Of a DNA stretch of 64,000 bases, positions 10,850 through 61,905 are shown in pieces; position 1 is the first letter of the stretch, and each line of letters starts with the position of its first letter. The DNA lies in NCBI RefSeq assembly GCF_035594765.1, contig NC_085842.1:109034782-109098781 (forward strand), in the 5' to 3' direction. The position numbers and the translations under genes are program-made. Source of the DNA: Anolis carolinensis (taxonomy: Eukaryota). Below the pieces are notes generated by a model that had not been told where the DNA came from, searched no databases, and saw only the letters and a program-made list of their open reading frames with translations.

Positions 10850-11272
<423 letters not shown>

Positions 11273-15317: not shown

Positions 15318-17145
15318 TAAGTATCTGCAAATTTTACTGAAAACTGAGAAGGAAAATTTCTGTGTGGCTCTGCTAGTAAGCTGTCTGTTGGCCAGCAGTC
15401 TACCCAATCCCAAGGAAGCCCTCTATAATACACTTCAGTGACTTTCCCAACATATTGAATAAAAACATAACTGGAAATCTTGAGCCTTCATCTTGTTACA
15501 CAGTATTGGATGTGTTATGCACAATAACCAGTACTTCTGAAATAGAGATCAAATTAATATTGTCTACTGGTAGCACATGTGAAGAGAAAGTTGCAGTGTG
15601 GAGTGCTTCTATTCACTACTCTAATCAATCCTGCCCTTTCCCTTGATCTCTCCTCAGACCAGTTTCCCCATCTTGCCCTTGGGTGGGGGGAGAGTCAAAA
15701 TTGTCATGGTTTTTGCACCTGTCCTACTTGATAATCTTATTCCAGTAGATCTTTTAACCAACAGCTATTTTTGCAACATCATAATGGGCATTCCCCCTGA
15801 AATTAGGAAATGGAATAATGAAGTATAGTACAAACGCTGTATGCGCAGGGGATACATTCTCTGATCTGACATGGATATTCCAAGCGGGGAATAATAGTGA
15901 ACCCTATTGAAATGAGGGACGTCTACCCCAAAAATACTGTAGCATCACAGAGAAGGCTCTAGAAAATGCCCAGAGAGGATATAATAATTTGTTGGCTATG
16001 GATAAATAAGACTGCTTATACCGCGGATACAAGGGCATACTTTTCACTAAACAGATACACTATCTTCAAATGCATAGATACATAGGTAGGCAATAATTCT
16101 ATCATGAAATTAGTGTACTAAATCAAATATTTTTGTGTTGTAAAACTTTAAGTAATCCTCTCTTTTTGGCCTGGCCATAGTTGTTGCCTGTTTTATTTAT
16201 ATTGGGATTCAATTTTCCCTACAAAGTGAGGACACCAGAATGGTAACTGGTGTTGATAGAGAAAAAGCTTGGAGCCCACTTTAGATTTTAGGTACTGCTC
16301 ATATGCAGATCCCACATTGTGTAATAATTCCCAAGTTAAGGGATGTCATTGAATAATAATTTTGGGTTGTGATTAAATCAAGAATTGTGTATACCTTAAA
16401 TACCTGCTCTAAAATTTAGATAATCCTGAATTGGTTCTATCTGTTTCTTGTTGTTTCCCTCATTTAGACCTTTTCTTTTCTCCCCCTTTTATCCCCACAC
16501 AAACACATACCCCGTTCCCAATTAGTTGGATTATGAAAGAAGGTGTTGTTTTTGTTCTATTGTATTGCATAAAGAAAAATATAAACGATAACAACCTTTG
16601 GATTGCTGTGAGTTTCCGGGCTGTATGGCCATGTTCTAAAAGCATTCCCTCCTGACATTTTACCCACATCTATGGCAGGCATCCTCAGAGGTTGTGAGGT
16701 CTATTTCTAGTTATCTATTGATTAATTGCATGTTGTAAATGTTAAAGAGGTCTTCTTCTGTGTCCTACTAGTGAGGCCAACACACCTTATCACAATGTGG
16801 GAGAGGCCTTCTCAGTAGTGGGTCCCTAAGGGAGAAATGAATGCCCTCTCCCCTTGGAAACTAGATTAGTGCAAATCTTGATTTTATTTAAGTGGCAATC
16901 AAAAACTTGGCTATATATTGTATTAAAACCTTTCACACAACAATGGTTTAAACTGGTTTTAACCTTATAAGCATGTTTAAACTCCTTAATGTGGTTTTAG
17001 TCTATTCAAATTATTGTTTTAAAAGAATTCAACCTGTTTCTATTTGTGTGTGACCCTGACATCTTTTGATATAGGGCAGAATAGCAGCTCAACAATCAAT
17101 CAATATAATAATAATGAATGTTTTTCCTTCCCCCCCCCCCCCCAG

Positions 17146-17332
17146 GATAATCAAAAGTAGATCCCAGCAACGAAACTTTCAGCTACTTGTGATTACACAT
17201 GATGAAGATTTTGTGGAACTTTTGAGTCGTTCTGAATATGTGGAAAAGTTCTACAGAATTAAGAAGAACCTTGAACAGTGTTCTGAAATTGTGAAATGTA
17301 ATGTCACCTCTTTGGGATCATATCTTCATTAG
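17146..17332 (+). CDS. RAD50: RAD50 terminal coding exon (exon 25 equivalent), H-loop
   Basis: cccag|GATAAT...CATTAG stop; 187 nt; [41 protein letters not shown]. Confidence 0.98.
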
Positions 17333-31034: not shown

Positions 31035-31169
31035 ATGTCTTTGCCAAAACTGCTGTGCATCTGCTGCTTCGCAGGAATTGTTCTTACAGCTCCAACATCA
31101 CCAAACAACTTCAGAAGAGAAATCTCATCATTTCAGATAACCATAAACAATTCGTGTAATGATGCAAAG
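31035..31169 (+). CDS. IL-4/IL-13-family cytokine A (IL13 syntenic position), exon 1: signal peptide + helix A
   Basis: TATAAATA at 30956, ATG 31035; MSLPKLLCICCFAGIVLTAPTSPNNFRREISSFQITINNSCNDAK|gtaaat; 135 nt, phase 0. Confidence 0.88.
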
Positions 31170-31629
31170 GTAAATCTAATATGTCATTTTGTTATGTATA
31201 TTGTTGATGTAATATTATGGCTGTTGTTTATGCTTATGCTGAGCACGTGGGAAATTGTGGACCATTTTTCACCTTAGCAATGTCCTCCTGATGCTTTAAT
31301 GTGCATTGATTTTCTAGAGATATGGCAGCAACGGGATTTGTATCCTAATACAAACAAGCACCCTGGGAAGAAATTATATGGGGGGGGGGGGGAGTGCTAT
31401 AATTTAAACATTTTTTTAAAAAAAGCTCTCTTGAAAAAGAACAGACGCCAAAGATACGAGACGTGAAACTGGATGATTCCAGAATTAAAAATTCTAATGT
31501 GCTGATTTGGCTGAATTGAGAGACATTCAAATGAAAATAGGACTCCCTGAAGACAGAGTGATTTTGAATCTGAATTCTCCCTAACATACATGAGTGATTT
31601 TGATTTTGGTGAAACACAGAGACCCATCA

Positions 31630-31842
31630 TGTGCATCTACACTGTAGAATTAATGCAGTTTGACAACACGTTGACTGCCATGGTTTGATGCTATTGGAGT
31701 TGTAGTTATACAAGATGTTTAGCCTTCTTTGCCAAAAAGTGCTAGTGTTTCATCAAACTACAAATCCAGGGGGTCCATAGCATTAAGACATGGAAATTGA
31801 AGTGGTGTCAGACTGCATTAATTCTACAGTGTAGAGGCACCC
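31630..31842. mobile_element. Palindromic MITE (second copy about 45119-45320)
   Basis: gtgcatctacactgtagaattaatgcag...ctgcattaattctacagtgtagaggcac inverted termini. Confidence 0.7.
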
Positions 31843-32005
31843 AAGACAGCATGCCTCCAAAACCTGACACACCCTCGAGTTTACATAAAATAGTTTAATA
31901 ACTGGCAACTCAAAATCAAATCCCACTGAATACTTTTATCAGAGTTCTGTAATTCCTGTGCTTTGTGGGAAAGATGCTGAATTAATATATGACACCCTGA
32001 GCTTT

Positions 32006-32385
32006 CATAGAATCATAGAATCATAGAATAGTAGAGTTGGAAGAGACCTCATGGGCCATCCAGTCTAACCCCCTGCCAAGAAGCAGGAAATCGCATTCAA
32101 AGCACCCCCGACAGATGGCCATCCAGCCTCTGCTTAAAAGCCTCCAAAGAAGGAGCCTCCACCACAGTCCGGGGGAGAGAGTTCCACTGTCGAACAGCTC
32201 TCCCAGTGAGGAAGTTCTTCCTGATGTTCAGGTGGAATCTCCTTTCCTGTAGTTTGAAGCCATTGTTCCGTGTCCTAGTCTGCAGGGCAGCAGAGAACAA
32301 GCTTGCTCCCTCCTCCGTATGACTTCCCCTCACATATTTGTACATGGCTATCATGTCTCCTCTCAGCCTTCTTTTCTGCAGGTTG
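32006..32385 (-). mobile_element. CR1 LINE 3' end in cytokine A intron 1
   Basis: ORF 32097-32354 RTRNNGFKLQERRFHLNIRKNFLT; (TTCTATGA)n tail. Confidence 0.9.
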
Positions 32386-33308
32386 AGAGGAGAAACTCTT
32401 TCTCCAGAGTTTGGTACCTTTTATAAGCACTTTTTTCCTGATTCCTCTTAAGATCAGGAATCAGAGAACTGTTTTGGTGACCAACATAAGTGTGATGTTT
32501 TGTGTTTGCTTGGAAAATGTTGTATATTCAAGTACTTCTATGGCTGTTCGCTCCTCACATCCCACCACCATGCATCTCATTCTGTGCTTTCAGTGCCAAC
32601 TATGCAGAAAACAAACGAGCCTCAAGCTGTAATGCTTTCATCATAACTCCCAGTCCCTTGTGCTTATCCTATATCTTGCTTCTTGCCTAGGAACACACAA
32701 GTATGACATAAACCATTTTTTAAACCAATTGCTTTCTCACATTTACAGACCTATAAAGGACTTGTAGGGGGAAACAACTCAGTCTAAATGATGCCCTTGC
32801 ACAAAATCTTTATTTGAAACATTAGGGGTTTCATACCCCCCTTTGGAAAGGAGGTATCATTGTTGTTGATGTTGTAGTTGTTGACTGTATTTTATTCGAA
32901 AGTTCCAATTGGTAATGGGCTCTTGCACACAATCACCTGGCACACAATCTCTGCACATATTTATCCAAAAGTGGACTGATGTCATTCCTTTAACAAAGCT
33001 ACAGTTCTTGCAATTTTCAACCAATTTCAACATACTGGTGGAAACATTTCTAGCCATTTATTAATTTTTGATGGAACCACAAAGATTTTGATTGCTTGGC
33101 AGAGATTCCAGTTTTGAACCTACAAAAATTGGGTAGTATCCAAATTTAGAAAATTATTTTCCAAATTGGGTTCAAGGCTGAATCTTCCATTCAGTATTTA
33201 ACTTGAGTAATAAAATATACTGTTTCATCAAGAAAGGTTTTTCTCATTCACAGAATATGTAAACAAAGACACTTTCCTTATCTGATCTGTCACTTTTTTT
33301 TTCCACAG

Positions 33309-33359
33309 CATCTGCCTTGCTGGAATGAGCCAGTAAGAAAAATCCATTTCAAAGAAGAT
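33309..33359 (+). CDS. Cytokine A exon 2
   Basis: T-tract+ccacag|CAT...GAT|gtaagt; 51 nt phase 0; HLPCWNEPVRKIHFKED resembles cytokine B exon 2 DVPCGNQRIREIKL. Confidence 0.85.
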
Positions 33360-34774
33360 GTAAGTGATATTTTTTGTGTAGACTTCAAGAATCAGTGCCT
33401 CTACTTTCTGTTTTCTTGAATGAAATTGAAGTCACAGCAGGAAAAAACCTGGGTCATTTCAGCTTGCTAACATGAAAAAGCTGGTGTTTTAGAAATCTTC
33501 AGTAACCTCCCAGTGCCACCAGTGACTACATTTTTACAAATCTGTCAACAAGCATAAACCATGAGGCATAATTAGCAGGGCATGTAAAGCTTTTTAAAAA
33601 CAGATTATTGTCTTATAACAGATCAGTGAGAGGCAGTACTGCAATTTGAAAATGTTTTCTAATGAATGAATGTATCTACTAAAAGTTTTTTATTAATATG
33701 TTGCAAATCATTGAGAAAAGCAAACATGATATTGTATAAGGAGATAACGTAGGTGACTTAGCTTTAGAATCTAAAGTTAACCACATTGCCATTATTCACA
33801 TGCAAAGTGTTACTCTTTCTTTTCATTTTTTAAAATCTACAGTGAGAAACATTGTCTGTATTTCCTTCAGGCAGGTATTCATTACTACCTGTTCTTCATA
33901 ATGATTATAGTTAATGCTGGAAGTTCTTACATAGCCCCCAACAAAAATGTGGCAGATGTTATTTCCCCAAACTGTGCAATTTGTTTCCAGCCAATCCAGT
34001 CGGAAATATTCCTGGGAAATGTACTTTCCATCTTCTATTGCCACTACCGTGAGGAGGTCTCTCTCCGTCACTGGACCTCTTCACAGGGACTATAGGACTG
34101 ACTCCTTAGAGCCTTAAAGGTTTCAAACATGATCCACTTTACGTAATCCACTATATGCAATCCAACTAAATGGAATTCTGCTAAGCACATTCTCATTCAC
34201 ATAGCACATTCTTATACATAATGAATAATTTGATCCACTTTATCAGAACCGCAGATATATTTAAATAGAAGATATCTATCATCTTCAAAAAAATTCTGAC
34301 ATGCTTCCCCCAACTTCATTTAATTTGTAGTATGCCTTACAGTCATTTCTGACCTATGGCGACCCTCAGGCAGATCTGTCAGTGTGTTTAGTTCAAAATT
34401 AATAAGATTTTCCTGGTTGTCAGAGATTCAAATCCTGGTCTATAGGGTCCTAGGCCCCTTCTACACTGCAAAGTAGATAATCCAGACTATCTGATTTGAA
34501 CTGGTTTATATGAGTCTACATTGCCATATAATCCAGTTCAAAGCAGATAATCTGTATTTTATTTGGCAGTGTAGAAGGGCCCCTAATTCAATGCCCAAAC
34601 CACTGCAGCAGTGGTGCAACAACTTGTGACCCTCCAGGTATTTTGGACTTCTGCTCCCAGAATTCCCGGCCACTGGACAAGCTGAGAAGGCCTTCTGGGA
34701 GTTGGAGTCCCAAACACCTGGTGGGCTACAGGTTGTGCATTACTGTACTACACCATGCTCTCATTCATTTAATT

Positions 34775-34909
34775 CAGTGGTTCTCAACCTATGGGTCCCC
34801 AGGTGTTTTGACCTACAACTCGCAGAAATCCCAGCCAGTTTACCAGCTGTTGGGATTTCTGGGAGTTGAAGGCCAAAACATCTAGGGACCCACAGGTTGA
34901 GAACCACTA
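34775..34909. mobile_element. hAT MITE in cytokine A intron 2
   Basis: TIR CAGTGGTTCTCAACCT, 8-bp TSD ATTTAATT. Confidence 0.85.
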
Positions 34910-35135
34910 ATTTAATTTAATACAGAAACATTACCTTGGGATTAACGCAAATTACACTCCCATCATGTCTTACCATTGATGATATCAATAAGGATTGAGG
35001 AGAGTTGAAGATCAACATTTGGAGGGCTTTCCATTTTTCATCGCTTCTAGAGTCAAACCTAAATGAATATTGTTTGCAATGTGTATTAAACAAGAAGTGG
35101 TCATGTTGTCTTTTATTTCCAACTTTTCTTAACAG

Positions 35136-35255
35136 TGCAACCAAACATACTATCAAAATATATTCCGCCAAATCAAAGCTAATCTGAATCAGACTACATG
35201 CAAGACTATTTTTTCAAAAGCTGTAATTGCACCTGTGCTGCTTGGTAACACTTCA
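35136..35255 (+). CDS. Cytokine A exon 3 (helices B, C)
   Basis: ttttcttaacag|TGC...TCA|gtaagt; 120 nt phase 0; CNQTYYQNIFRQIKANLNQTTCKTIFSKAVIAPVLLGNTS; resembles cytokine B exon 3. Confidence 0.85.
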
Positions 35256-35614
35256 GTAAGTATCAGTGATGGTTATCGATACTGTTTTTATTCCAAAACT
35301 GTGGGAAGGGGTGCTAACATAAGGCTTATTATTTTAAAACGACTTAAACAATATACTTTGTTCAATGCAAGCATATAGTGGGCCCTTGATATCCACTAGG
35401 GTTTGGTCCCAGGGTGGACATACACAACCCATTGGTATAAAATTGCATGGCTGCTCAAGTCCCATTATATATATATACAGTGGTGTAGTAAATGCTGTCC
35501 CTTATATAAAATAGCAAAATCAAAGCATGCTTAGAACTTTTTTGTGTGTAATTGGTGTCTACTTAGTGAAGGCACAGATAGATATTGCCTTAAGACGGAA
35601 GAGGCATCTGTGGC

Positions 35615-35902
35615 CAGGGCTGTAGCCAAGGGGGGGGGGGGGGGGTTGGGGTTCAAACCTCCCCCCCCCCCCGAAAATTTTTAGGTTTTTTTTTAAAAAA
35701 CTGATTTACTCATGAATTTTAACTAGTTAACCAAATTCCCCTAAGTGTCCACTGAAGTTTATCTGTCTTGAGTGTGGACTGAAGTTTATCAATGGAGCCT
35801 GATTTCTAAATTATTTTGTGTTATGGAACTATTCTTCATGATTCGCTAAAAAAAAGTTTCACCCCCCCCCCCCCCCGAATTTTTTTTCTGGCTCTGACCC
35901 TG
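35615..35902. mobile_element. hAT-type MITE with poly-G/poly-C tracts in cytokine A intron 3
   Basis: CAGGG...CCCTG termini, 8-bp TSD TCTGTGGC. Confidence 0.75.
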
Positions 35903-36650
35903 TCTGTGGCTGGTTTGAAGGCCACTTTTTGCTCAGAGACTCTCTGAGAGCTACATGGACTCCTGAAAAATGAAACAAATTACCCCAAAGTGTCTCATTC
36001 CCAAAAAGAAGTATGTTAATCTGATTTTCAAAAAGAAATATGTTAATCTTAAACAGTACAAAATATTTCTGCAACCTACTTGGAAGGCAAACTGTAATCC
36101 CTGGAAGCTTCTAGAAGCAGCAATGTACTCGTTTTTTGCCAGAAAAAAATCAATTGAGGGATTATGGAATTATTGAGAGCCACAGATATGTCTCTGGAGC
36201 CCTCCTGTGGTCCCAATGCCCCAGTTTGCCTGGGCTTGGCCTTTAGGGAGCGTCAGGCAAAATCAAAGAGTCAATATGCACTAGTAAATGGTCAATAAAC
36301 AGATATAAAATATAAAGTTATATTGAATGAAGTACAATCAGTACAGAATTTACAATGTAATGTTAATGTTCCATACATCAAAATGAATATATAACTGAAC
36401 AATGTTTGCTCTATACATACATTTTCACTTGTTAAATCAGTCAGTTGAAACTGAAGAGCATGTCTGTAACTAAGGTTTGTGCAATCATCAGAAATGCTAA
36501 ACAATTTTTGTGAATTTACTCTCATGGGTGTCTTTTTTGAGGGCAGATGGTTTTGAACAAAAAGGGGGTGTATTGTCATGTTCATATGGTTTTTTTCCTG
36601 TTTAGTAGAGCTTAACAAGATTCTCCTTTCTTCTTCTTCTTCTTCTCAAG

Positions 36651-36758
36651 GTTCCTCACAGTTTCTCACAATCTCCTGCCACTACTCTGAAAGTCTTCTG
36701 TACAAAAGTTCAATATTATGTTGGATACCTAAAGAACGAATGTTCCAATCAGTTGTGA
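36651..36758 (+). CDS. Cytokine A exon 4 (helix D, stop)
   Basis: (TTC)n tract+ctcaag|GTT...TGA; 108 nt; VPHSFSQSPATTLKVFCTKVQYYVGYLKNECSNQL*; TLKxFC...YV..L.N.C shared with cytokine B. Confidence 0.87.
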   Translation, partial: VPHSFSQSPATTLKVFCTKVQYYVGYLKNECSNQL

Positions 36759-46032: not shown

Positions 46033-47985
46033 CTTACTTACTTAGGCGATCCCTCGTAGTTCGAGGATGATTGTCCTCCATCTGTGGGGTCTTGGGGGTG
46101 TGTCTGTAGGTGGCTGAAGAGACCTATTCTTGATCTGCATGTTCTACCACAGTGAGGACATCGGTTTCCAGGTGGAAGGCGGTCCCGGTCAGGGTTGGCT
46201 TGATGGGCCTTCCTCTTGGCACGTTTCTCCCTTAAGCCCTCCATTCATGCCTCTTTGAACTCCGCAGCACTAATGGTCACAGCTGACCTCCAATTAGAGC
46301 GCTCAAGGGCCAGGGCTTCCCAGTTCTCAGTGTCTATGCCACAGTTTTTAAGGTTGGCTTTAAGCCCATTTTAAAATCTCTTTTCCTGCCCACCAACATT
46401 ACGTTTCCCGTTCTTGAGTTGGGAGTAGAGTAGCTGCTTTGGGAGACGGTGATCGGGCATTCGGACAACATGGTCAGTCCAGCGGAGTTGATGGCGTAGG
46501 AGCATCGCTTCAATGCTGGTGGTATTTGCTTCCTCAAGCACGCTGACATTTGTCTGCCTGACTTCCCAAGAGATTTGCAGGTTTTTTCTGAGGCAACACT
46601 GATGTTGCCTAGGAGTTGAGTGTGACGTCTGTAGACCGTCCACGTTTCGCAGGCAGAGACCAGGGTTGGGACGACAATGGCTTTATAAACAAGCATCTTG
46701 GTATCTCTATGGATGTTCCGGTCATCAAACACTCTCTGCTTCAATGTGTTGTTGAAGGCTTTCATGGTCGGGATCACAGGGTTGTTGTATGTATTTCGGG
46801 CTGTATGGCCATGTTCCAGAAGTATTCTCTCCTGATGTTTCACCCACATCTAAGACAGGCATCCTCAGAGGTTGTGAAGAGAGAATACTTCTGGAACATG
46901 GCCATACAGCCCGGAATACATACAACAACTCTACTCTCTGCTTAATTCTGAAAAATGCTGCACTCGCAGAGCTCAGGCAGTGTTGTATTTCAGTGTCGAT
47001 GTTGACTTTTGTGAAGAGGTGGCTGCCAAGGTAGCAGAAATAGTCAACATTTTCTAATGTTACACCATTAAACTGTATTCCTGGCTTTGCAGAGGGATTA
47101 GCTGGTGCCTGTTGGAAGAGCACTTTGGTTTTCTCAATGTTCAATGAGAGGCCAAGCTTCTCGTATGCTTCTGCGAAGGTGTTTAGAGTGGCTTGTAAGT
47201 CTTCTTCTGAGTGCCCACAAACTACGTTGTCATCGGCATATTGGAGTTCTATAACAGATGTTGTGGTGTCCTTGGTTTTGGCTCTCAGTCTGCTGAGGTT
47301 AAATAGCTTGCCATCTGTCTGATAGATGATTTCCACACCAGTGGGAAGCTTCCCATCAACAAGGTGAAGTATCATAGCGATGAAGATGGAAAATAAGGTA
47401 GGGGCAATAACACATCCCTGCTTGACACCTGATTCCACCTTAAATGGGTCACTTTGGGAGCCGTTGTTGTCCAAGACTGTTGCCATCATGTCTTCATGAA
47501 GGAGCCGCAGGAGGTTCACAAATTTGTCAGGGCACCCGATTTTTTGGAGGATGGTCCAGAGAGCGCTGCGATTCACTGTGTTGAATGCCTTTGCAAGGTC
47601 AATGAATGCCATGTACAGAGGCTGATTTTGTTCCCTGCATTTTTTTTGGAGCTGTCGTGCAGTGAAGATCATGTCCACTGTTCCTCTGGAGGGGCGGAAG
47701 CCGTTCTGGGATTCTGGGAGGGTGTCTTCTGAAACAGGGAGAAGGCGGTTTGCAAGGATTCTTGCGAGAATTTTCCCAGCGGATGTTAGAAGGGAGATAC
47801 CGCGATAGTTCCCACAGTCTGTTCTATCCCCTTTCTTGAAAAGGGTGATGATGGTGGCATCCTTGAAGTCTGCTGGGACTTTCTCGGCCGCCCACACTTT
47901 TTCAATGAGCTGTTGGAGTTGTTGTATCAGCTCAGGTCCACCCTCTTTGAAGATTTCAGCAGGGATCCCATCAGGTCCGCTGTAT
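46033..47985 (-). mobile_element. RTE-clade LINE, 5'-truncated, RT domain largely open
   Basis: ORF 46725-47999: GPDGIPAE, NYRGISLL, FIDLAKAF, GVKQGC, YADD; (TAAG)n-like tail. Confidence 0.92.
46742..46932. mobile_element. Penelope pseudo-LTR inverted pair nested in RTE
   Basis: 11-bp TSD ACTCTCTGCTT (46731-46741 / 46933-46943); inverted arms. Confidence 0.8.
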
Positions 47986-48032
47986 TTGTTAATATCCAAT
48001 GTTAGCTACAGTTAACATGCAACACTTTTTTT

Positions 48033-49339: not shown

Positions 49340-49550
49340 CCATAATTTCCATTTTATCATTCATTTTCCATCTTATCATTTGGATATGTGGTTTTTGGGT
49401 TCTCTGAATAGGCAAATTCACAACTCATCTCTACATTTACGTCAGGTATTTATCTGTTTCCTCTGGTTATAAATAAGCAGCTTGCAAATAAATGACAAAG
49501 CAGTAAGGAGGACACCATTCATTGACCTGACCAATCCAAAGAACGAGATC
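49340..49550 (+). promoter_or_regulatory. Cytokine B proximal promoter / 5'UTR
   Basis: Alternating TTTCC (NFAT) and TTATC (GATA) 49346-49377, TGTGGT 49387, TTCTCTGAA (GAS) 49400, TTACGTCA 49437, TTATC, TTCCTCT, TATAAATA 49468. Confidence 0.72.
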
Positions 49551-49688
49551 ATGCTTTTGAAAGCAATCTTTGCCTTTTGTTTCTTGGCTCAAGGTATTTC
49601 TAAAATTGCAGCGCAACCAGTCAAGAAGTTTGAAAGGGAAGCACAAGAATTGGTGAAGATTGTGAATGCCACATGCACGGTGTTAAAG
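49551..49688 (+). CDS. IL-4/IL-13-family cytokine B (IL4 syntenic position), exon 1: signal peptide + helix A
   Basis: TATAAATA at 49468, ATG 49551; MLLKAIFAFCFLAQGISKIAAQPVKKFEREAQELVKIVNATCTVLK|gtaaga; 138 nt phase 0. Confidence 0.9.
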
Positions 49689-50535
49689 GTAAGAAGAGCA
49701 TCTTGCGTTTTAGGATCATGTTATTTTCTTTTTCAGTCAGAGTATTGCTTGCTTGACCAGGCTCAGTTGTGTATTGCTTTATGAAATATATAGTTTTAAT
49801 GTTATAAAAATGTTCATACCAAATGCACAGAACGAGTATGCCCAATTTGATGTTATTAATAAATGAATGTATTTCGGGGTGGGTGGGGGGTGGGCAATAT
49901 GTTTCATTTATTATCTTGCTGAAATCAAGATGTTGAATGAAACATGATTTATACTTTAAGAGATAATACATGAATAGAGTTTTAATTAACAGGCAAACCC
50001 TATTTTGTCTTATGGACCCCACCCCCTGTTTATAACATCTGGGGTTAATTTATAAACAGACGTATTGATTGAATTGATTTGGCATTTGATAGGAATGAAA
50101 GGTCAATTTAAACAGAAATAAGTAAGTAGAACAGAAATTTGAAATACTGAAAAATGTTTGCTTCAAACCAACATCAAAGCAATTTAACAATTTCAATGTA
50201 TCAGTCATACCTGTTTGGACATTAAGAAGTGCTAATGAATGAAATACCAAATCTTAGACCTTGCTTAGAAGAGTACACAAGGCAGATAAGTGTTGTGCAC
50301 AAGGCAGATAAGTGTTGTGAAAAACATTAGGGACAAGAAGACATCAGAGCTGGTGTGTCAACCCCCCAAATTCACAAAGGACATATCCACAGACAAAAGT
50401 TACCTTATGGTAGTAAGGCTATTATTTTTATCCGCTTCTCAACTAGATGAAAAGGTTACTAGACCTTCTCTTACAGAAAGTACAATTTAAAAAAAATCCC
50501 TTCCCTGAACTATAACTTTTTTTCCATTTGCACAG

Positions 50536-50610
50536 GATGTGCCTTGTGGGAATCAGAGAATAAGAGAAATCAAATTGGCACCTGCTATGAGATGGAACAA
50601 TAGAACACTG
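50536..50610 (+). CDS. Cytokine B exon 2
   Basis: ttttccatttgcacag|GAT...CTG|gtgagt; 75 nt phase 0; DVPCGNQRIREIKLAPAMRWNNRTL. Confidence 0.87.
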
Positions 50611-50750
50611 GTGAGTGATACATTCAAAAATTATATACAAGGGATAATATGCCTACAGAACATTTGTTCAGCCATTGAGACATCTAAGACTTATGAAGGT
50701 TAGCTTAGAAAATGATCATGCATGATTCAATTTGATTTTTCTTTAAACAG

Positions 50751-50873
50751 TGCGCTTCCTACAGCAATACATTCTGCCAAGTTAACCGTGCTCTGAAGGA
50801 ACTCAACCACGGCGAGTGCAGAAATGCGAACGTGACACAAATCCAGGGAGCTTTAAAACCCCTAAAAGGACAT
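50751..50873 (+). CDS. Cytokine B exon 3 (helices B, C)
   Basis: ctttaaacag|TGC...CAT|gtgagt; 123 nt phase 0; CASYSNTFCQVNRALKELNHGECRNANVTQIQGALKPLKGH; TFCQ resembles the IL-4 TFCR motif. Confidence 0.9.
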
Positions 50874-51064
50874 GTGAGTATCCTAATTAAAAACAACCCC
50901 ATTGCTGAAATACAAAACTTAAAGAGTTTAACCAAGAGGCATCTGGGGATTTGATGCATTTTACAACAAACCTTAGTACCACTTTCATTGTGTGCTAACA
51001 TTTGTTGAACACATGAAATATTCTTAATGTGTCACTTTAAGAACAGTGATAGATTCTTAAAGGG

Positions 51065-51725
51065 AAGGGCCGGGAGGGCTTTTGCACAATTAAAACTCGT
51101 GCACCAACTGCATCCGTACCTCTAAAAGTCTGATCTGGCCACAGTGGTCCACGCCTTAGTTACATCTTGGATAGATTACAGCAATGCACTCTACTTGGGG
51201 CTGCCTATGAAGACGGTTCAAAAACTGCAATTTGTGCAGAGAGCAGCTGCCCGATTTCTAAAAGCAGCTGACTACAGGGAGCATACTCCTCCCTTGTTAA
51301 AGCAGCTCCACTGGCTGCCTGTGAGTTTCAAGGCCCAATTAAAAGTGCAAGTTATCACCTATAAAGCCCTTTATGGTTCAGGCCTTTAGGTCCTCAGGAG
51401 TGGGGGCTTCTCACGGTCCCACCAAGATTGACTATTTTTAGTATGATGATGGACCTTTAGCCTTGTCAATATCTATTGGTTTTAACTGGTCTTGTCTCCA
51501 CGGTATAATATGTCTTAAACCCAGTACAATTTTTAACATATGCATTTATTTATTGCGATATTGTTTTTAAAGTTTTAAATGATTATTAGTTATATTATAT
51601 ATTATGTCTTTTTTTTTTTTTGCTTATGTATGTACAGTATTGGGATTTGATTTTGTGGTGAGCCGACCCAAGTCCTTGTGGAGAGGGGGCGGGATATAAA
51701 TAAAGTTTATTATTATTTATTATTT
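51065..51725 (+). mobile_element. L2 LINE 3' fragment in cytokine B intron 3
   Basis: VHALVTSWIDYSNALYLGLP..LQFVQRAAAR..LHWLPV; tail gggatataaataaagtttattattat. Confidence 0.85.
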
Positions 51726-52513
51726 GTTCAAAACTGTTTTCACATTGAAATGAATAAGAATTGAAATGGGTGGGTTTCAGCTTCATTGTTCTGCCTCCTT
51801 CCAAGAAGAAAATCTTGGTGCCTACTTGCTGAAGATGGAAATATATATTGCCCTATGGCATGTAAATTAAACCCACCCAGTCATTAGAATCAGTATGAAA
51901 CGACAAGACAACTGTGTTTTGGACATATATTTAAATCATTAAATGGTCAATCTATAAAGGGATTAAATAGAGTATAGACTATTCTTAGTATGATGATAGG
52001 CTTTTAACCTTTTGGCCTTTTAGCCTTGTTGGAAAGATCATGCATCAGATCTCAATAATCGTCATGTATGTCCTTTTTGTAAATTTGGTATTTTGAACTG
52101 TGAATATGAGCCCATAACAGTTTCAGTTGGATTCTTAATTTCCTGACAATATAGGAATAGTTATGAGGATCAGGAGAGGTTATCAGCCTGCCCTTGTGGC
52201 CACTTGTCCCTCTTCTGAATGGGGTGATGCTGGGGTGCAACTTTCACAAGCAGAAACAAAGCAGTTCTGTAGGGCTGCTCTGTTTCTTCTGGTGTCTCTT
52301 TATCTCGGTCAGGGTCACGTGATTTATCAACCACATTCATATCAGAGACAATCTTGTATTTCCTTATTTCAAGAGACACCAGACTTCCCTTTACATGAGA
52401 TGTGTCTAAAGATGGGAGACTGTGGTCCATGTTATTTTATTCCCATAACAGCTGGTAGGGAACCATTGAAGCTGAACAAAGATCACAGATCTGTTGTACT
52501 TTCTTGTTTACAG

Positions 52514-52627
52514 GTCAGCTGCCAGTCATCAAACCATCACATCGTCCACATCACTCTGAAGGCGTTCTGCCCCAGACTGCTCAATTATGTCCAGACATTG
52601 TACAACATATGTGCAAAACGATATTAA
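52514..52627 (+). CDS. Cytokine B exon 4 (helix D, stop)
   Basis: tttcttgtttacag|GTC...TAA; 114 nt; VSCQSSNHHIVHITLKAFCPRLLNYVQTLYNICAKRY*; aligns without gaps to IL-4 helix D (TLENFLERLKTIMREKYSKC, recalled). Confidence 0.9.
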   Translation, partial: VSCQSSNHHIVHITLKAFCPRLLNYVQTLYNICAKRY

Positions 52628-54308
52628 TCAGGAAAGTTTCTTTTACCAGAGAATGGAGTCAATATTTTTCTGACAAATCAAGGCCTCCCCAGTGTTTCTT
52701 ATTCTTAAATTATGCTTTCAAGATGTAATTGGAATAATCAGAATATAAAAATATACACACAAACCACTTTCTTGTGCATCCCTGTATACAAGCACATAAG
52801 ATGGAGCATGGGGAAAGGGTATGTGCAGGAATGTGATTTGCATTGTATGTTTTTCACTCATTCATCTGTCTGATGGGTGGATGAATAGACTCTTATCAGT
52901 AGTTTCTGCTGTGACATAGATGATAATCAAGGGTGCTAAAAGCTTTTTTCATAGGCCGAAGATTTAAACCACATCCTATGTTGCAAATTTATTTATTTTC
53001 TCAACTTTTTGGAGTATCTATATTTTCCAGATGATTGCTTCTTTCTACACCAGCACCAGCCTCCTGTTTGTTCCCTAGCCAATTGTTCAGACTTATGTGA
53101 ATGAATTTGCTATTCATTCAACACTGACCTTAGAGTAAGGGGGAGAAATAAAACATGTCCTTAATGACACTTCCTAAAAACCACATGCAAGAAAATATAG
53201 CAGCAGCTTTGTCTTATATGAAGTTGGTCTGATGAAGTACGGGTTGAGTATCCTTTCTCTTAAATGCTTGTTACTGGAAGTGTTTTGGATTTTGGTTTCC
53301 CCCCATATTTTGGAATACCTATATTTGCACAGACATAGGTGGTGAGATATTTTGGAGATAGGACTCAGGTTTTAACAAAAAATTCATTTAAGTTTTATAT
53401 ATGCTTTTTACACATAGTCTGAAAATAATTTTGTACAATATTATTTTAATGTACACAAAGTTTGCACACATTGAATCATCAGGAAGCAGAGGAATCACAA
53501 TCTGTCACCCATGTGGACAATTGCAAATTTGAAATCTTTTTGATTTTGGTGTTCTGGGTAAGGAATGTTCAACTTATATAACGGGTAATTTCAAAAAGAA
53601 AGTATATTTCATTATGTGATCTTTGTTTTTCTTTACTTCCTTCTGAATCTTGAGCAATATAGGGTGCTTATGATAGTGGAAACCATGTGACTTTCCAGAT
53701 GCATTTGGACTGCAAGTTCTAACAGCCTTAGCATGTCTTAAAATAACAAATGTTAGGAGTTGCAGTCCAGTAATATCTGGTGGATACTGATAACTTTTGT
53801 TCACTGGTAACTTATTATGGTGTATGACATATGTAGGCATAGTTCACCTTATGCCAGTGTATGTCTTTTGTTTGTTTGTATCAGATTCTCTTGACCACCC
53901 TCTTGATTTCCCTTCCCATAGCTGTGCAGTGGCTGGTGGAGGCAGACAAACACCTTGCTACGTGACTACAACCAAGTGGGTATGAATGAGGCCATCCTCC
54001 AGAACCTCCAGAAGACTCCTGGAAGGTCCTAGAAGGTGCCTTTATTGTTGTGGGTCTGGTTGTAGTCACACAATCAGATGTTTACTGGCCACCCACTGGT
54101 CACTCCATGGCAATGGGTGGGAAAGTGAGTCCTATAAGCGTGGAGGAGACAGAGAGATATTTCATATTTCTGTTGTGGCAAATGTTACATCTCCCAATGC
54201 AGGTTCTTAGACCATATTTAATTCATAGCAAATGGTTGCTATGCTTATCTACAAAAATGGAAGAATGAGTGAAAGTATTAATGTCCTTTACTTTGTTTGG
54301 CACTGTGT

Positions 54309-54490
54309 AATATTTATTTTTTAAAGTATTTTAAAAGTATTTTAAAGTAAATCTTCTCAATCATTTAAATTATTTCAAACCAGAATAATTACATGCCAGT
54401 ATTTAATATTTAAATATATCTATTGTGCTGTTCTTTTTAAAACTTTATCTGGTTATTGTTTTTATTTGTATGAATTTATAAATTAATAAA
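54309..54490 (+). terminator. Cytokine B 3'UTR AU-rich elements and candidate poly(A) signal
   Basis: Several ATTTA pentamers incl. TATTTAATATTTAA (also in cytokine A UTR), AATAAA 54485-54490. Confidence 0.55.
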
Positions 54491-54657
54491 CATTTTGCAT
54501 TAAAAATGAAGCAATGTCGTTTTTAAGGTGGCACAGTTTCCCTGTTCAGTCATGACAATATCATACACCAAACATGGCATCGTATCACACCAATTCACTT
54601 TTTCATCTGTTGGACTAGCATAACTCAAAAGGGCCCCTCAAAACCTTCCTTTTAAAC

Positions 54658-55076
54658 CAGTGGTTCCCAATCTGTGGGCCGCAGCCCAGCAGTGGGCCAT
54701 AAAAGTGAAAATCCATTCTGCGAACCTCCTTCCTCTTTATTTTATGTTATTCATTTTATTTTTGCAGAGCTGACCATTGCATTGGATAGACCACTTCAGC
54801 TCTAGATTATTAAATATGGTTTTCTGTGGGTGAACTGATGGGAACTACTGGATGGCATATGTTCTGTGTCAGAAACTAGAACTGATGTGGTCTATCCAAT
54901 GCAAATTTCTGAATCAGCACCCCAAATAACCAAATCGATTCTAAAGTTGATGAAAAACGTATTTGCAACCCTTTTGGTACTAATGTTGAAGAGTGGCTCC
55001 TGGTCAAAGTGGTCCCCAGTCAAAGTGGTTCCCCGGTCAAAGTGGGCCCTGGTCAAAAAAAGGTTGGGACCCACAG
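54658..55076. mobile_element. Non-autonomous hAT element
   Basis: CAGTGGTTCCCAA...TTGGGACCCACAG, TSD TTTTAAAC/TTTTAAAT. Confidence 0.75.
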
Positions 55077-55129
55077 TTTTAAATCATGCAGCCCTCTCAA
55101 CTGAGGCATTTCCAAGGCACTGGAAAGTA

Positions 55130-56134
55130 AAATTAGCACATGTGGTAGTTGGTGCACCTGTGCAGCAATCAACGGAAACCTCTGAAAAGCTGAAGGCTTG
55201 TGGCTATGGCCCCGCCCACCCTCACCAGAGGGAGATATAATCAGAGCAAGGGGCTGTAGCCTTAGTTCCCTGCCGCCATGCATCGGCTCAAGGCATGAGT
55301 CATGTATGCGGGGAGGATGGGCAGGGATGTGCTAATTTCATAGATCACCACTCAAAGAAACATGGTTACAGGTAAGCAACCATGCTTTCTCCTTCGTGGT
55401 GTCTGTTGAAATAAGCACATGTGGTAGACTAGCAAGCCACGTACCTTGGTTGGCGGGTATCATGCCACCTCCGAGACGAGAACCGCTCTGCCAAATGCGG
55501 TATGTCTCCTTGACTGGATGTCCAATTTATAATGAATTGCAAAGTGGGGTCGACCAAATCGCTGCTCTGCAAATATCATCCAAGGCAGGGGTCCCCAAAC
55601 TACGGCCCGGGGGGCCACATGGGCCCATCAAAGCCATTTATCCGGCCCCTGAAGTGGCGGCTCCCTCCTCCTCCGCTGAGGAAAGCATGTGAAGCATGAA
55701 GCAGGGAAACGTACACGCCTTTCCTTCCTCCCTGCCCCCACGTGCACCTTTCCTGCTGCCACTGAGGAAGGCGCACATGGTGCGAGGGAAGAGGTAAAGG
55801 TGCGCACTTTTCCCACCTCCTCCCTTGCCCGGGGCGCAGTTTCCAAAGATTTGCTTGTATTTATAATGGTATTTTAATTATTATTTAATTATTAATTAAT
55901 TAATTATTAAGGGATGCTTTGATAGTGCTTTTGGTGCACAAAGGAAGAAGGGGGTTGGACTAAATGGCCCAAGGAGTCTCTTCCAACCCTTGTTGTTGTT
56001 GTTGTTGTTGTTTTTGTTGTTATTAACATTGAGGCTTGGTGGCCATCTGTCAGGGGTGCTTTGCTTGTGTTTTTGGTGCGAAAAGGCAGAAGGGAGTTGG
56101 ACTAAATGGCCCAAGGGGTCTCTTCCAACCCTCT

Positions 56135-56165
<31 letters not shown>

Positions 56166-59100
56166 TTATTAACATTAAGGCTGTATTAGTTTCCGTTTTG
56201 TTTTTTTTACTTCAAAATAAGTTATGTGTAGTGTGCATAGGATTTTTTTTCATATACTTTTAAAAACTATAGTCCGTCCCTCCAACAGTCTGAGGGACTG
56301 TGAACTGGCCCCCTGTTTAAAAAGTTTGGGGTCCCCTGATCCAAGGGAACACCTCAAAGATATGCTATCGAGGTAGCTAACGCCCTAGTTGAGTGGGCTT
56401 TCAAATGGGGTGGTGGATCTTTTTGAGACAACTGGTAAGCCAGCTTGATGGTGAAGCTGATAAGCGTTGTGGCAAGATCACCATTCCTTTGGCGCCATTG
56501 CGATACTTCACAAAGAGCTTATGTGTCTTACGAAAACCCTTGGTTCTATCCAAATAGAAAGTGAGTGCCCTCCGGGCATCCAGCATATGAAGGGATTGTT
56601 CGAGGCTTGTATCAGGGTTCTGAAAAAATCCTGGAAAAATGATGTCTTGCAACATGTGAAAGGCAGAGGCAACTTTTGGCAAAAAAAGTAATATCTGTTC
56701 CTAGAACTACCTTATCATGGTGAAATCAGAGATAGGGCTCATCTGCAAGCAATGCGCAGAGCTCACTGGCTCTTCGAGCAGTCGTGACTGCTACAAGGAA
56801 GGCCGCTTTCCAAGAAACATAAGGAACTTCAGCAGAAGCCATTGGCTCGAAGGGAGCTTTCGTTAATGCAGACAAAACTAAATCTAAACACTAAGCTGGC
56901 GGTGGGGTTACCAGTGGTCGAAGATTCTTGTAACCCCTAAGAAACAGTTGAATTAAGGAAACTTGAAAACATGAAGGGGCTCCTGCTCGACGTTGATATG
57001 TAGATATCGCGGTGAGATAACATTTAAGGGATGATAGGAATAGATTATCATGGGCTAACCACTGAAGGAAGTCCAGAAGCAAAGGCGTAGGTGCTTTCAA
57101 TGGCTCTATACCATGCTGATGGGTGAAAGTAGAGAATCTTCCCCAGTTTGCCGCGTAGGACCTCTGTGTGGAGGGTCTGTGTGTGGCATCTAAAACCTGT
57201 GTCATGGCTGCTGAGAGTTGCACTGCCGAAGGCACCAAGCTGTCAGACGCAGGATTTGAAGGTTGGAGTGAAACACTGCTCCATCTTGAATGGACAGAAG
57301 ATCCGGCCTTTTGCTGAGGGTGAGATAGTTGTTTGCCACCATCATGTTGAAGAATGGAAACCACGGTTGCCGTGGCCACCATGGTGCTATGAGAATAGCA
57401 TTGATGTTGTCTGCATATGCCTTGGTGATGACTCTCATCAACAGAGGTATTGGCGGGTCGATATACAGGAAGAGGCCATTCCAATTGAAGAGGAATGCAT
57501 CTCCCAGAGAGCCATTGTGCTCATCCTGCATCCTTCTGGTACAGTAGAGGGGACATTTGGCATTTTGCGGTGTTGCAAACAGATTGATGGATGGCTGTCC
57601 CTATTGCTGAAACAACCGGTTCACTTTGTCATGATGGAGAGACCATTAGTGGTACAAAGACCAAGTCCTGCTGAGACAGTCAGCCATCACATTGTTCTCT
57701 CCTGGAAGATGAACAGCAGTGAGGCGTATCCCCCTTGGCAGACACCAATCCCAGATTTGCAGGGTGAGACAAAGTAGAGAGTGGAATCTTGTTCCTACCT
57801 GCTTGTCCAGGTACTACATGGCAGTGGTGTTGTCCATACAGATTTGGACAATATGGCTGCGAAGAGAGTTTTCGAATGCTCTGAGAGTCTTCTGTACAGC
57901 AATAAGCTCCAACAGGTTGATGTGACAAGCCGCTTCAGATGGCGACCAGTGGTCTTGTATTGCAGGAGTGCTGGAATGAGCTGCCCATCCTTGAAGAGAG
58001 GCATCCATGGTCACCACTCTTGATGGACCTTTCATGCGAAACGACATGCCAACACAGACATTCTGGTGGGATGTCCACCACTGCAGGGACTTGTGTACGG
58101 CTGAAGTTGGTACTAGAAGTCAGAGAGGGCTGTGATGAAGAGGGTTGAATACCCTTAAAAACCATGCTTGCAAAGGTCGAAACAGAAGGTGAGTGAATGG
58201 CATCACTGCCATAGTTGAGGCCATGTGGCCTAAGGTGGACTGAATGTGTCTCGCTGACACACTTGGCTGATGTATGACCTTTTGGACAGCAGAGCACAGG
58301 TTCTGGAAATATGCTTCTGGAAGGTATGCCTTTTGCATGAGAGTGTTGAGGCAGCCTCTGATAAACTGAATATCCTGTGTAGGATCTAAGTGTGATTTCT
58401 TGCGGTTGACCAAAAGGCTGAGGTCCTGAAGGAGAGAAGGAGTGACTTCTATATGATGGAGGAGATGAGATTGAGAAAGACCGACCAAAAACCAGTCATC
58501 GATATATGGAAAGACTGTAATGCCCTTCAGTCGTAAGTGAGCTGCTACAGCTGCCATCACCTTTGTGAAAACCCGGCGTGCAGTCAAAATCCCAAAAGGA
58601 AGGACCTGAAAAGAAAAAGGCACAATTGCCCCTTTCTCAAGTAGGGCCCTAACCTCATCCCAAAGCACAGAGGATGGTGCTCTAGTGTGAATGAAACTTA
58701 ATGGTGGAGTTTTCTCAAATTCAATGGCATAGCCATGTTGAATGACATCAAGAACCCATTTGTCAGTAGTAATAGCCTGCCATGCAGAAAAAAATCTAGC
58801 CAGTCATGTGCCAAAGCGAACATGTTCTGGCTGGTGAGAAATGGGTTTGATTGAAGGGAAACACCCAAAATCTTGTGAACCTGTGGAGGTGAAGGGGTAC
58901 CACACCCATGCGGAGACAATATAGTCATAAGGGAGGGTGAAAGATTGTCGCTAAAAACGTCATTTTGCCTTCTGTTGGGGTTGATCTTTAAACTGCTGGC
59001 GTGCTTTAGCCTGTAGCTGTGGAGAGCGTGGCACTCTTGTTTGCATTGATGGCCTAAGAGAAGGTAGGTATGTCTTTCTGGAATAAGAGGAAGATGAAGA

Positions 59101-59939: not shown

Positions 59940-60563
59940 CAGCATTGCTCACTGCCCTACTCTTTACTGCCTCAGAAATTCCTCTGTTGAGGATGAGACA
60001 GTATGGCTTAAATAAGCCTGCATGACCTGTGGTCCTCCAGGTGTTTGGGACTCCCAACTCCCAGAAGACCTAGCCAAGCTGTCCAATAGTCAGAAATTCT
60101 GGGAGTTGGAGTCCAAAACATCTGGAAATCCAGAGATTGTGTAGGCCTGGCTTAAAAAATAATTTTGTGTGTAGAGATCTTCCACAGGACCAGATGCCCA
60201 CTTTGGAGTAGACAAAAGGATTACTCCTTAACCCAGCTATAGAGCTATGCCACACTTCAATATTCTGAGGTGATAATGACAAAACAAATAAATAATTCAG
60301 CCAAAAATAGCAGGCAATTCACAAATATGACATACCAAGAACTGTTGAACAACCCTAGCAACACAGGAAAGAATCCACCCTGTGGCAGCATAGAAATCTT
60401 ACTTCTCTACCATTATTGTGTATATTCACTGCCATCCACATCAGCAAATGTGATGCAAGTCTGGCTTGGTGTAGGCCAGGAGTGAGGATACCCTGACACC
60501 AAGGTGATATTGTTGTGTGCCCTCAAGATTGTAATGATTCTAAGGACAACTTATTATGGGGTT

Positions 60564-61864: not shown

Positions 61865-61905
61865 GACAACAAAACCACATACACTGGAAATCCAAGGTGT
61901 TTATT
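61865..61905 (-). terminator. Poly(A) site of a convergent gene (KIF3A expected by synteny)
   Basis: Minus strand AATAAA (61900-61905), CA about 13 nt downstream, then GU-rich GTGTATGTGGTTTTGTTGT; no coding exon in window. Confidence 0.5.

What the first reader, a model, noticed from the sequence alone, without database searches (positions are those of the whole stretch)
49551..52627. Hidden four-exon IL-4-like cytokine gene B at the IL4 position
Seen: exons of 138/75/123/114 nt give 149 aa, MLLKAIFAFCFLAQGISKIAAQPVKKFEREAQELVKIVNATCTVLK-DVPCGNQRIREIKLAPAMRWNNRTL-CASYSNTFCQVNRALKELNHGECRNANVTQIQGALKPLKGH-VSCQSSNHHIVHITLKAFCPRLLNYVQTLYNICAKRY, with 8 mature Cys and 3 sequons. QELVKIVN, TFCQ and TLKAFCPRL..Y..C line up with IL-4 helix A, B and D motifs (human sequences recalled). 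Exon 2 is unusually long, and exon 3 is short as in IL13, so the gene looks like a mosaic.
Basis: partly seen in the sequence, partly recalled or inferred. Interest (0 to 1): 0.88.

Follow-up and report, generated by a model that had tools for sequence, protein, structure and literature searches.

The report
Unannotated IL-4/13-family cytokine gene beside RAD50
The four exons are real and most likely form an intact, unannotated gene for a small secreted IL-4/IL-13-type immune signalling protein, the second of two such genes downstream of RAD50 in what is probably a lizard genome, but its expression and its exact kinship to IL-4 could not be tested here.

Summary
Four exons of 138/75/123/114 nt have GT-AG borders, all three introns are in phase 0, and the ORF is 149 aa.

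The best reading is a real IL-4/13-family cytokine gene.
- The last RAD50 exon lies upstream on the same strand (E 4.8e-30).
- A second four-exon, all-phase-0 gene (gene A, 31035-36758) lies between RAD50 and gene B. It is a colinear paralogue: exon-wise z is 5.9/4.4/1.9/5.2.
- A and B also match at nucleotide level over the TATA promoter and 5'UTR, and over the end of intron 1 plus the start of exon 2.
- Gene B has a TATA box, a purine at -3 of the ATG, AUUUA repeats and an AATAAA signal.

The "mosaic" idea is not supported. The long exon 2 is 51 nt plus 24 nt gained where the paralogue's donor site reads AT. Exon 3 (123 nt) matches the paralogue (120 nt) and the 120-129 nt reported for undifferentiated IL-4/13 genes.

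Direct homology is unproven. Exon-by-exon Pfam, PDB, Atlas and two large protein searches found nothing. The joined protein was not searched or folded, by instruction. KIF3A is not in the window. Orthology to IL-4 rests on position only.

The parts
49450..49475 (+). Proximal promoter block shared with gene A: a GATA-like TTATC(T/A)G, then TTCCTCTG, then the TATA box (TATAAATA, 49468-49475)
   Evidence: DNA alignment A1. blastn 30936-31043 vs 49450-49559: 70% over 112 nt, E 2.6e-5. Naming the motifs as factor sites is inference.
49532..49550 (+). 5'UTR block just before the ATG. 14 of 14 bases (CAATCCAAAGAACG) are identical to gene A, and there is an A at -3 of the ATG
49551..49688 (+). Exon 1 coding part (46 aa): hydrophobic signal-peptide-like N-terminus, then an amphipathic stretch (helix A region) ending in N-A-T-C
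   Evidence: 100-degree hydrophobic moment peak at residues 25-34. Paralogue z 5.9, 0 of 2000 shuffles.
50536..50610 (+). Exon 2 (25 aa; A-B loop region with the conserved P-C-x-N). 50536-50586 corresponds to the paralogue's 51-nt exon 2; 50587-50610 is a 24-nt in-frame extension carrying the NRT sequon
   Evidence: blastn 33276-33344 vs 50499-50571: 74%, E 6e-7. Alignment A2 shows ATGAG where gene A has its GTAAG donor.
50751..50873 (+). Exon 3 (41 aa; helices B and C region, 3 Cys, NVT sequon)
   Evidence: AlphaFold2 of this piece alone gives helix 6-19, a turn, helix 28-38, mean pLDDT 62.6. Paralogue z is only 1.9.
52514..52627 (+). Exon 4 coding part (37 aa + TAA; C-D loop end and helix D, 3 Cys)
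   Evidence: AlphaFold2 of this piece alone gives coil 1-6 then helix 7-36, pLDDT 72.6. tblastn to gene A exon 4: 43% over 23 aa, E 0.005. z 5.2.
52628..53152 (+). Likely 3'UTR: overlapping AUUUA motifs at 52987-52995, another at 52962, and the first AATAAA at 53147-53152
   Evidence: The transcript end is inferred, not observed.
31035..36758 (+). Gene A, the tandem paralogue at the IL13 position. Model: E1 31035-31169, E2 33309-33359, E3 35136-35255, E4 36651-36758; 137 aa, all introns in phase 0
   Evidence: Exon 3 is tentative.
17144..17332 (+). Last coding exon of RAD50, the locus anchor
   Evidence: Matches human RAD50 residues 1251-1312 at E 4.8e-30. Further RAD50-like ORFs at 789-1148 and 10880-11275 were recognised by eye.

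Best explanation
Gene B is an intact, unannotated protein-coding gene of the IL-4/13 family of short-chain four-helix cytokines. It is the second of two tandem paralogues downstream of RAD50, which makes it the positional counterpart of IL4. A TATA promoter shared in sequence with its paralogue would drive a roughly 1.1-kb mRNA of four exons. That mRNA would encode a 149-aa precursor: a signal peptide, then a basic mature protein of about 128-134 aa with 8 Cys and 3 glycosylation sequons. [quoted passage not shown] The secreted protein would bind IL-4R-alpha with gamma-c or IL-13R-alpha1 and signal through STAT6, with AU-rich elements keeping the mRNA short-lived. Shown here: exon structure, intact ORF, locus, paralogy, promoter and 3' signals. 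Inferred: family membership by position and architecture, fold, receptor and signalling, expression.
For: The exons, phases and splice sites are exact. The RAD50 C-terminal exon lies upstream on the same strand. In human and chicken, IL13 and IL4 lie between RAD50 and KIF3A, and all IL-4, IL-13 and IL-4/13 genes have four coding exons and three phase-0 introns (PMC4905449 section 6; PMC9465101 section 3.4.4). Gene A is a colinear paralogue with the same architecture. Exon-wise alignment z is 5.9, 4.35, 1.9 and 5.2, against -1.3 to 2.1 for mismatched exon pairs. Summed identity is 25.5%, similar to old IL-4/13 paralogues in fish (26-29%, PMC4905449). Nucleotide-level matches cover the promoter/5'UTR and the intron 1/exon 2 border. 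TATA box, AUUUA repeats and AATAAA are present. Mature pI is about 9.7 and mass about 15 kDa, with amphipathic helical segments in exons 1, 3 and 4. The exon 3 piece folds as helix-turn-helix and the exon 4 piece as loop plus a long helix, matching the exon-to-helix map of human IL-4 (PMC4905449).
Against: No direct sequence or fold link to IL-4 or IL-13 was obtained. Exon-wise Pfam gave none. PDB phmmer and two-sequence profiles gave only chance hits. The ESM Atlas gave no usable hit. phmmer of exon 1 against 1.84 billion representatives gave 0 hits. The word-indexed search gave 0. There is no RNA evidence: the one read-laying run was lost to a filter, and no run holding the stretch is on record as RNA. 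KIF3A was not seen in the window. The AlphaFold2 pieces have low confidence, and helices in short amphipathic peptides are not specific. The exon 4 acceptor is not uniquely determined.
Confidence: 0.72

Rival explanations
1. A and B are lineage-specific tandem duplicates of a single ancestral IL-4/13 gene. Gene B is then in the IL-4/13 family but is not a one-to-one orthologue of mammalian or avian IL-4.
For: Both genes have an exon 3 of intermediate size (120 and 123 nt). That is the range reported for undifferentiated IL-4/13 genes (120-129), not for tetrapod IL-4 (126-177) or IL-13 (105-114) (PMC4905449). Both end with a Cys a few residues before the stop. Tandem IL-4/13 copies arose independently in the elephant shark (PMC4905449). 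A and B share promoter, 5'UTR and intron 1/exon 2 nucleotide similarity.
Against: Protein identity is only 25.5%, so the duplication is old. The gene order and strand (RAD50, then A, then B) are the same as RAD50-IL13-IL4. Local nucleotide similarity could reflect constraint or gene conversion rather than a young duplication.
Confidence: 0.3
2. Gene B is an unexpressed or decaying duplicate, a young pseudogene whose ORF happens still to be intact.
For: No transcript-derived or annotated protein with its exons was found in the large collections. No RNA run is on record as holding it. Its ancestral exon 2 donor is lost.
Against: All four exons are open. The three donors match 8 of 9 consensus positions. 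TATA, Kozak purine, ARE and poly(A) signal are all present. At 25% identity to its paralogue, a neutral copy would long since have collected stops. IL-4-type genes are silent in most sampled tissues, so missing transcripts are expected.
Confidence: 0.1
3. It belongs to another four-exon short-chain cytokine family of the same chromosomal neighbourhood (IL-5, KK34, CSF2, IL-3) that moved to this position.
For: Those genes share the small size, the signal peptide and, as recalled, the phase-0 intron build. No search here tied B specifically to IL-4/IL-13.
Against: In the described loci those genes lie on the other (5') side of RAD50 (recalled from the chicken and human maps, not tested here). 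B lies 3' of RAD50 and is a paralogue of the gene at the IL13 position.
Confidence: 0.05
4. It is a chance arrangement of open frames and splice-like sites and is not a gene.
For: Phase-0 exon-like segments passing my splice filter occur about 1.15 times per kb. No database homologue was found.
Against: There is colinear similarity to gene A in all four exons, with 0 of 2000 shuffles reaching the score for exons 1 and 4. Independent nucleotide matches lie at the promoter and at exon 2. The position is the expected one next to RAD50.
Confidence: 0.03

Closest known systems
IL-4 of mammals and birds
   Same: Position as the second cytokine gene downstream of RAD50 on the RAD50 strand. Four coding exons and three phase-0 introns. 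Signal peptide plus a basic mature protein of about 130 aa. AU-rich 3'UTR. From memory only: a Cys early in exon 2, a T-F-C at the start of helix B, an S-C at the start of exon 4, and Y-x-x-C near the C-terminus.
   Different: Exon 3 is 123 nt against 126-177 nt in tetrapod IL-4 (PMC4905449). Exon 2 is 75 nt, about 24 nt longer than in the paralogue. It has 8 mature Cys (human IL-4 has 6, recalled). There is no detectable exon-level sequence similarity to solved IL-4 chains. KIF3A was not seen next to it in the window.
IL-13 of mammals and birds
   Same: Same family, locus and exon-intron build. A P-(L)-C-x-N-type motif in exon 2 (recalled for human IL-13).
   Different: The IL13 position (first gene after RAD50) is taken by gene A, not B. 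Exon 3 is longer than the 105-114 nt of IL-13 (PMC4905449). B has a C-terminal Cys that human IL-13 lacks (recalled).
Undifferentiated IL-4/13 genes of frog, spotted gar and elephant shark
   Same: They lie between RAD50 and KIF3A, have four exons with phase-0 introns, and have an exon 3 of 120-129 nt (PMC4905449). There are tandem copies in the elephant shark.
   Different: Different lineage. Here there are two deeply diverged copies in an amniote, in the same order and orientation as IL13 and IL4.
Gene A in the same window (31035-36758)
   Same: Same strand, same four-exon phase-0 build. Shared promoter/5'UTR block and exon 2 acceptor region. Six Cys at aligned positions. Exon 4 core T-L-K-x-F-C...Y-V..L.N.C.
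   Different: About 25% identity. B has two extra Cys (one in exon 3, one at the start of exon 4, possibly an extra disulfide), an 8-residue longer exon 2, and a clear AATAAA and AUUUA cluster that I did not find within 840 nt of A's stop.

Membership tests
IL-4/13 family (IL-4, IL-13, IL-4/13) | Four coding exons separated by three phase-0 introns (PMC4905449) | tested here: met
   exons of 138/75/123/114 nt, all GT-AG, all phase 0.
IL-4/13 family (IL-4, IL-13, IL-4/13) | Location directly downstream of the RAD50 3' end, on the RAD50 strand | tested here: met
   The last RAD50 exon is at 17144-17332 (+), E 4.8e-30 to human RAD50 1251-1312. Gene A lies 13.7 kb downstream and gene B a further 12.8 kb.
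IL-4/13 family (IL-4, IL-13, IL-4/13) | KIF3A on the far side of the cytokine gene(s) | tested here: inconclusive
   No KIF3A-like frame was recognised by eye in 53500-64000, which holds retroelement remains. KIF3A may lie beyond the window. No homology search was run on this stretch.
IL-4/13 family (IL-4, IL-13, IL-4/13) | Detectable sequence similarity to the IL-4 or IL-13 families (Pfam models, solved chains) | tested here: inconclusive
   Exon by exon only: Pfam gave none and PDB none or chance hits. The joined 149-aa product was not searched, by instruction. Members of this family share only about 18-25% identity across classes (PMC4905449), so 25-46-aa pieces have almost no power.
IL-4/13 family (IL-4, IL-13, IL-4/13) | Up-up-down-down four-helix bundle with helix A in exon 1, B and C in exon 3, D in exon 4 | tested here: inconclusive
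   Pieces only: exon 3 gives helix-turn-helix (pLDDT 62.6), exon 4 gives loop plus a 30-residue helix (pLDDT 72.6), and exon 1 has an amphipathic segment. The whole protein was not folded.
IL-4/13 family (IL-4, IL-13, IL-4/13) | Secreted small protein: signal peptide, about 115-135-aa mature chain, N-glycosylation sites, ATTTA motifs and a poly(A) signal (PMC4905449 Table 1) | tested here: met
   Hydrophobic N-terminus, mature chain of 128-134 aa, pI about 9.7, 3 sequons. Three to four ATTTA motifs and AATAAA. No dedicated signal-peptide predictor was available.
IL-4/13 family (IL-4, IL-13, IL-4/13) | Signals through IL-4R-alpha-containing receptors to STAT6; expressed in type-2 lymphocytes and granulocytes | not testable with these tools
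IL-4 proper (orthologue of mammalian/avian IL4) | Exon 3 of 126-177 nt in tetrapod IL-4 (PMC4905449) | tested here: not met
   123 nt. This is just below the range and equal in class to the paralogue's 120 nt.
IL-4 proper (orthologue of mammalian/avian IL4) | Second gene after RAD50, distal to IL13 | tested here: met
   The order is RAD50, then A, then B, all on +.
IL-4 proper (orthologue of mammalian/avian IL4) | Groups with IL-4 rather than IL-13 in a phylogeny | not tested
   No IL-4/IL-13 sequences of other species could be obtained, because all protein searches came back empty.
IL-5 / KK34 / CSF2 / IL-3 | Location on the 5' side of RAD50 (recalled from the human and chicken maps) | tested here: not met
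   Gene B lies 3' of RAD50.

The most novel reading that the evidence does not exclude
The locus may preserve an amniote Th2 cytokine pair in which neither gene has taken on the IL-4 or IL-13 hallmarks. Both have an exon 3 of 120-123 nt and both have a C-terminal Cys. That would mean either an independent squamate duplication of IL-4/13 or a different division of labour from mammals and birds. Gene B has further diverged through an extra Cys pair and an 8-residue A-B-loop extension created by a splice-donor shift. Squamates reportedly lack a retrievable IL13RA2 and have lost IL5RA (PMC13005343), so their type-2 ligand-receptor wiring could differ substantially.
Probability: 0.25. Interest if true: 0.55.

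Novelty: new member of a known kind. Interest (0 to 1): 0.42.

Why it matters
Reviews state that clear IL-4 and IL-13 orthologues were known only from mammals and birds (PMC4905449). They also say that reptile data are needed to date the IL4/IL13 duplication (PMC9465101). A squamate locus with two intact, deeply diverged paralogues in the RAD50-IL13-IL4 order and orientation bears directly on that question. It also gives concrete exon coordinates for primers, RNA-seq junction checks and recombinant protein. The paralogue comparison offers a simple origin for the long exon 2: loss of a donor site and use of the next GT 24 nt downstream. It also points to a promoter/5'UTR block shared by both genes that may hold common regulatory sites. 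The finding remains a new member of a well-known family rather than a new kind of system, and a current genome annotation that I could not consult may already list it.

Tried and rejected
- Pfam on each exon of B and A: no family, only weak chance hits.
- PDB sequence search with B exons 1, 3 and 4, and with two-row A+B profiles of exons 1, 3 and 4: nothing, or chance matches to PabB.
- The search for homologous proteins on contiguous window ORFs that contain B exon 1, B exon 4 and A exon 1, scoring only the exon part so that full-length proteins were length-eligible: no candidate.
- phmmer of B exon 1 against 1.84 billion representatives: 0 hits.
- ESM Atlas with exons 4 and 3: no usable hit.
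- RNA evidence: the look-up of sequencing runs listed DNA-like holders and four low-share 'RNA?' guesses.
- KIF3A: looked for by eye in 53500-64000, not found.
- Literature searches for squamate IL-4/IL-13 found no description.
- Complex prediction was not used; co-folding the exon pieces would have been off-label.
- Rejected: the 'mosaic of IL-4 and IL-13' reading, and the chance-ORF reading.
Full report
OBSERVATION. The exons are E1 49551-49688 (138 nt), E2 50536-50610 (75 nt), E3 50751-50873 (123 nt) and E4 52514-52627 (114 nt with TAA), giving 149 codons. All three introns are GT..AG and all are in phase 0. Each donor matches 8 of 9 consensus positions, and the acceptor tracts are 63-74% pyrimidine. 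There are 8 Cys beyond the hydrophobic N-terminus and 3 sequons.

Splice-like phase-0 segments are common on this strand, at about 1.15 per kb by my filter. The splice pattern alone therefore proves little. The frame upstream of exon 4 is also open (ORF 52163-52627), so the exon 4 acceptor is not uniquely fixed by sequence.

CONTEXT. The window begins inside RAD50. The ORF at 17114-17332 (+) matches the last 62 residues of human RAD50 at E 4.8e-30, and further RAD50-like frames lie at 789-1148 and 10880-11275 (recognised by eye).

A local tblastn of B's exon peptides against the window found one other place. Exon 1 matches 31035-31169, and exon 4 matches 36684-36752 (43% over 23 aa, E 0.005), both on the + strand. 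A splice-site scan between those two points gave only six candidates. Two of them are colinear and resemble B's exons 2 and 3. This defines gene A: 135/51/120/108 nt, 137 aa, all introns in phase 0.

Exon-wise global alignments of A against B give z scores of 5.9, 4.35, 1.9 and 5.2 against shuffles. Mismatched exon pairs give -1.3 to 2.1. Summed identity is 25.5%.

An unbiased blastn of the two regions adds two nucleotide-level matches.
- 30936-31043 matches 49450-49559 (70%, E 2.6e-5). This covers the TATA box, a GATA-like TTATC plus TTCCTCTG block, and a 14-nt identical 5'UTR block up to the ATG (alignment A1).
- 33276-33344 matches 50499-50571 (74%, E 6e-7). This covers the end of intron 1 and the first 36 nt of exon 2.

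So B is one of two old tandem paralogues, ordered RAD50, then A, then B, all on one strand. No KIF3A frame was recognised in 53500-64000. That stretch carries reverse-transcriptase remains.

WHY EXON 2 IS LONG. In alignment A2, gene A's exon 2 ends at GAT|GTAAGTGATA. At the aligned place B reads ATGAG, and 24 nt further on it reads CTG|GTGAGTGATA. B's exon 2 is therefore the family's usual 51 nt plus a 24-nt in-frame extension. The cause is either loss of the old donor or a 24-nt insertion. The extension adds eight residues and the NRT sequon to the A-B loop.

Exon 3 (123 nt) is practically the size of A's (120 nt). Published ranges are 126-177 nt for tetrapod IL-4, 105-114 nt for IL-13 and 120-129 nt for undifferentiated IL-4/13 genes (PMC4905449, section 6). 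Both genes here fall in the last class. This removes the need for a 'mosaic' explanation.

GENE SIGNALS.
- The TATA box lies at 49468-49475, 76 nt before the ATG.
- There is an A at -3 of the ATG.
- There are overlapping AUUUA motifs at 52987-52995, another at 52962, and the first AATAAA at 53147.
- The predicted mature protein is about 15 kDa with pI about 9.7.
- It has strong 100-degree hydrophobic moments in exon 1 (residues 25-34), exon 3 (84-87, 104) and exon 4 (135-139).
- AlphaFold2 on single exon pieces, by reference, gave helix-turn-helix for exon 3 (pLDDT 62.6) and loop plus a 30-residue helix for exon 4 (pLDDT 72.6).

This agrees with the exon-to-helix map of human IL-4 (PMC4905449). 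It is weak evidence, because short amphipathic peptides often fold as helices in such predictions.

FAMILY. The defining features that could be tested are met: four coding exons, three phase-0 introns, position 3' of RAD50 on its strand, small secreted basic product, and ARE-bearing 3'UTR.

Direct homology was not obtained.
- Exon-wise Pfam gave nothing.
- PDB searches with single exons and with A+B profiles gave nothing or chance hits.
- The Atlas gave no usable hit.
- The word-indexed protein search gave no candidate.
- phmmer of exon 1 against 1.84 billion representatives gave 0 hits.

Family members of different vertebrate classes share only about 18-25% identity (PMC4905449). Pieces of 25-46 aa therefore have little power, and these blanks are uninformative about family. 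They do indicate that no protein carrying these exons is in those collections, so the gene appears unannotated there.

So were my own: Cys early in exon 2, T-F-C, S-C at the start of exon 4, and Y-x-x-C at the C-terminus. They remain leads.

STEPS LEFT OUT OR CONSTRAINED. The joined 149-aa product was not sent to any search or fold tool.

In one search a local script concatenated the exon translations in memory, only to number residues and compute pI, mass and hydrophobic moment.

From then on, my scripts stopped short of those places or masked them.

Other first-stage notes on this genome call the organism a lizard. I did not verify this.

VERDICT. This is a real, intact, apparently unannotated IL-4/13-family gene at the IL4 position of a RAD50-linked tandem pair (confidence about 0.7). 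Orthology to IL-4 rests on gene order only. One measurable IL-4 criterion, exon 3 size, is narrowly not met. A lineage-specific or undifferentiated IL-4/13 pair therefore remains a live alternative (about 0.3 within the family reading). Expression and function are untested.

Noticed in passing
window 31035-36758 (+): Gene A, a second four-exon, all-phase-0 cytokine-like gene (137 aa, 6 mature Cys, 4 sequons) at the IL13 position. It also has no match in the protein collection. I found no AATAAA or ATTAAA within 840 nt of its stop.
   Followed up: partly
window 30936-31043 and 49450-49559: The promoter/5'UTR block is conserved between paralogues that share only about 25% protein identity. It contains TTATC(A/T)G(C/T)TTCCTCTG, TATAAATA and a 14-nt identical CAATCCAAAGAACG just before the ATG. 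This may be shared regulation (GATA/NFAT-type sites are my guess) or local gene conversion.
   Followed up: partly
window 33276-33344 and 50499-50571: There is 74% nucleotide identity across the last ~37 nt of intron 1 plus the first 36 nt of exon 2 in both genes. This is unexpected for such old paralogues. It could reflect constraint on exon 2 splicing or gene conversion.
   Followed up: partly
window 8750-9910, both strands (ORF 9410-9904 on -): A repeat-rich segment inside a RAD50 intron. Its acidic ORF carries a twice-repeated ...APT(D/E)(E/D)ETFEGFS... motif. It resembles the 'LTR-encoded ExFxGF/LEDGF-binding peptide' notes made elsewhere on this genome.
   Followed up: no
window 46725-47999 (-) and 56400-59490 (-): A LINE-type reverse transcriptase ORF lies between genes A and B (RVT_1, E 2.7e-38). 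Degraded retroelement frames with an RT fragment lie downstream of gene B.
   Followed up: partly
window 51040-51700 (intron 3 of gene B) and 32097-32354 (intron 1 of gene A, -): Interspersed-repeat-like inserts with open frames (for example 51144-51389). They probably account for part of the word matches in sequencing runs with small shares.
   Followed up: no
window 49492-49506 (+): A 4-codon upstream ORF (ATG..TAA) lies close to the predicted transcription start of gene B. Whether it is transcribed depends on the true start site.
   Followed up: no
They were not examined and were kept out of later searches.
   Followed up: no
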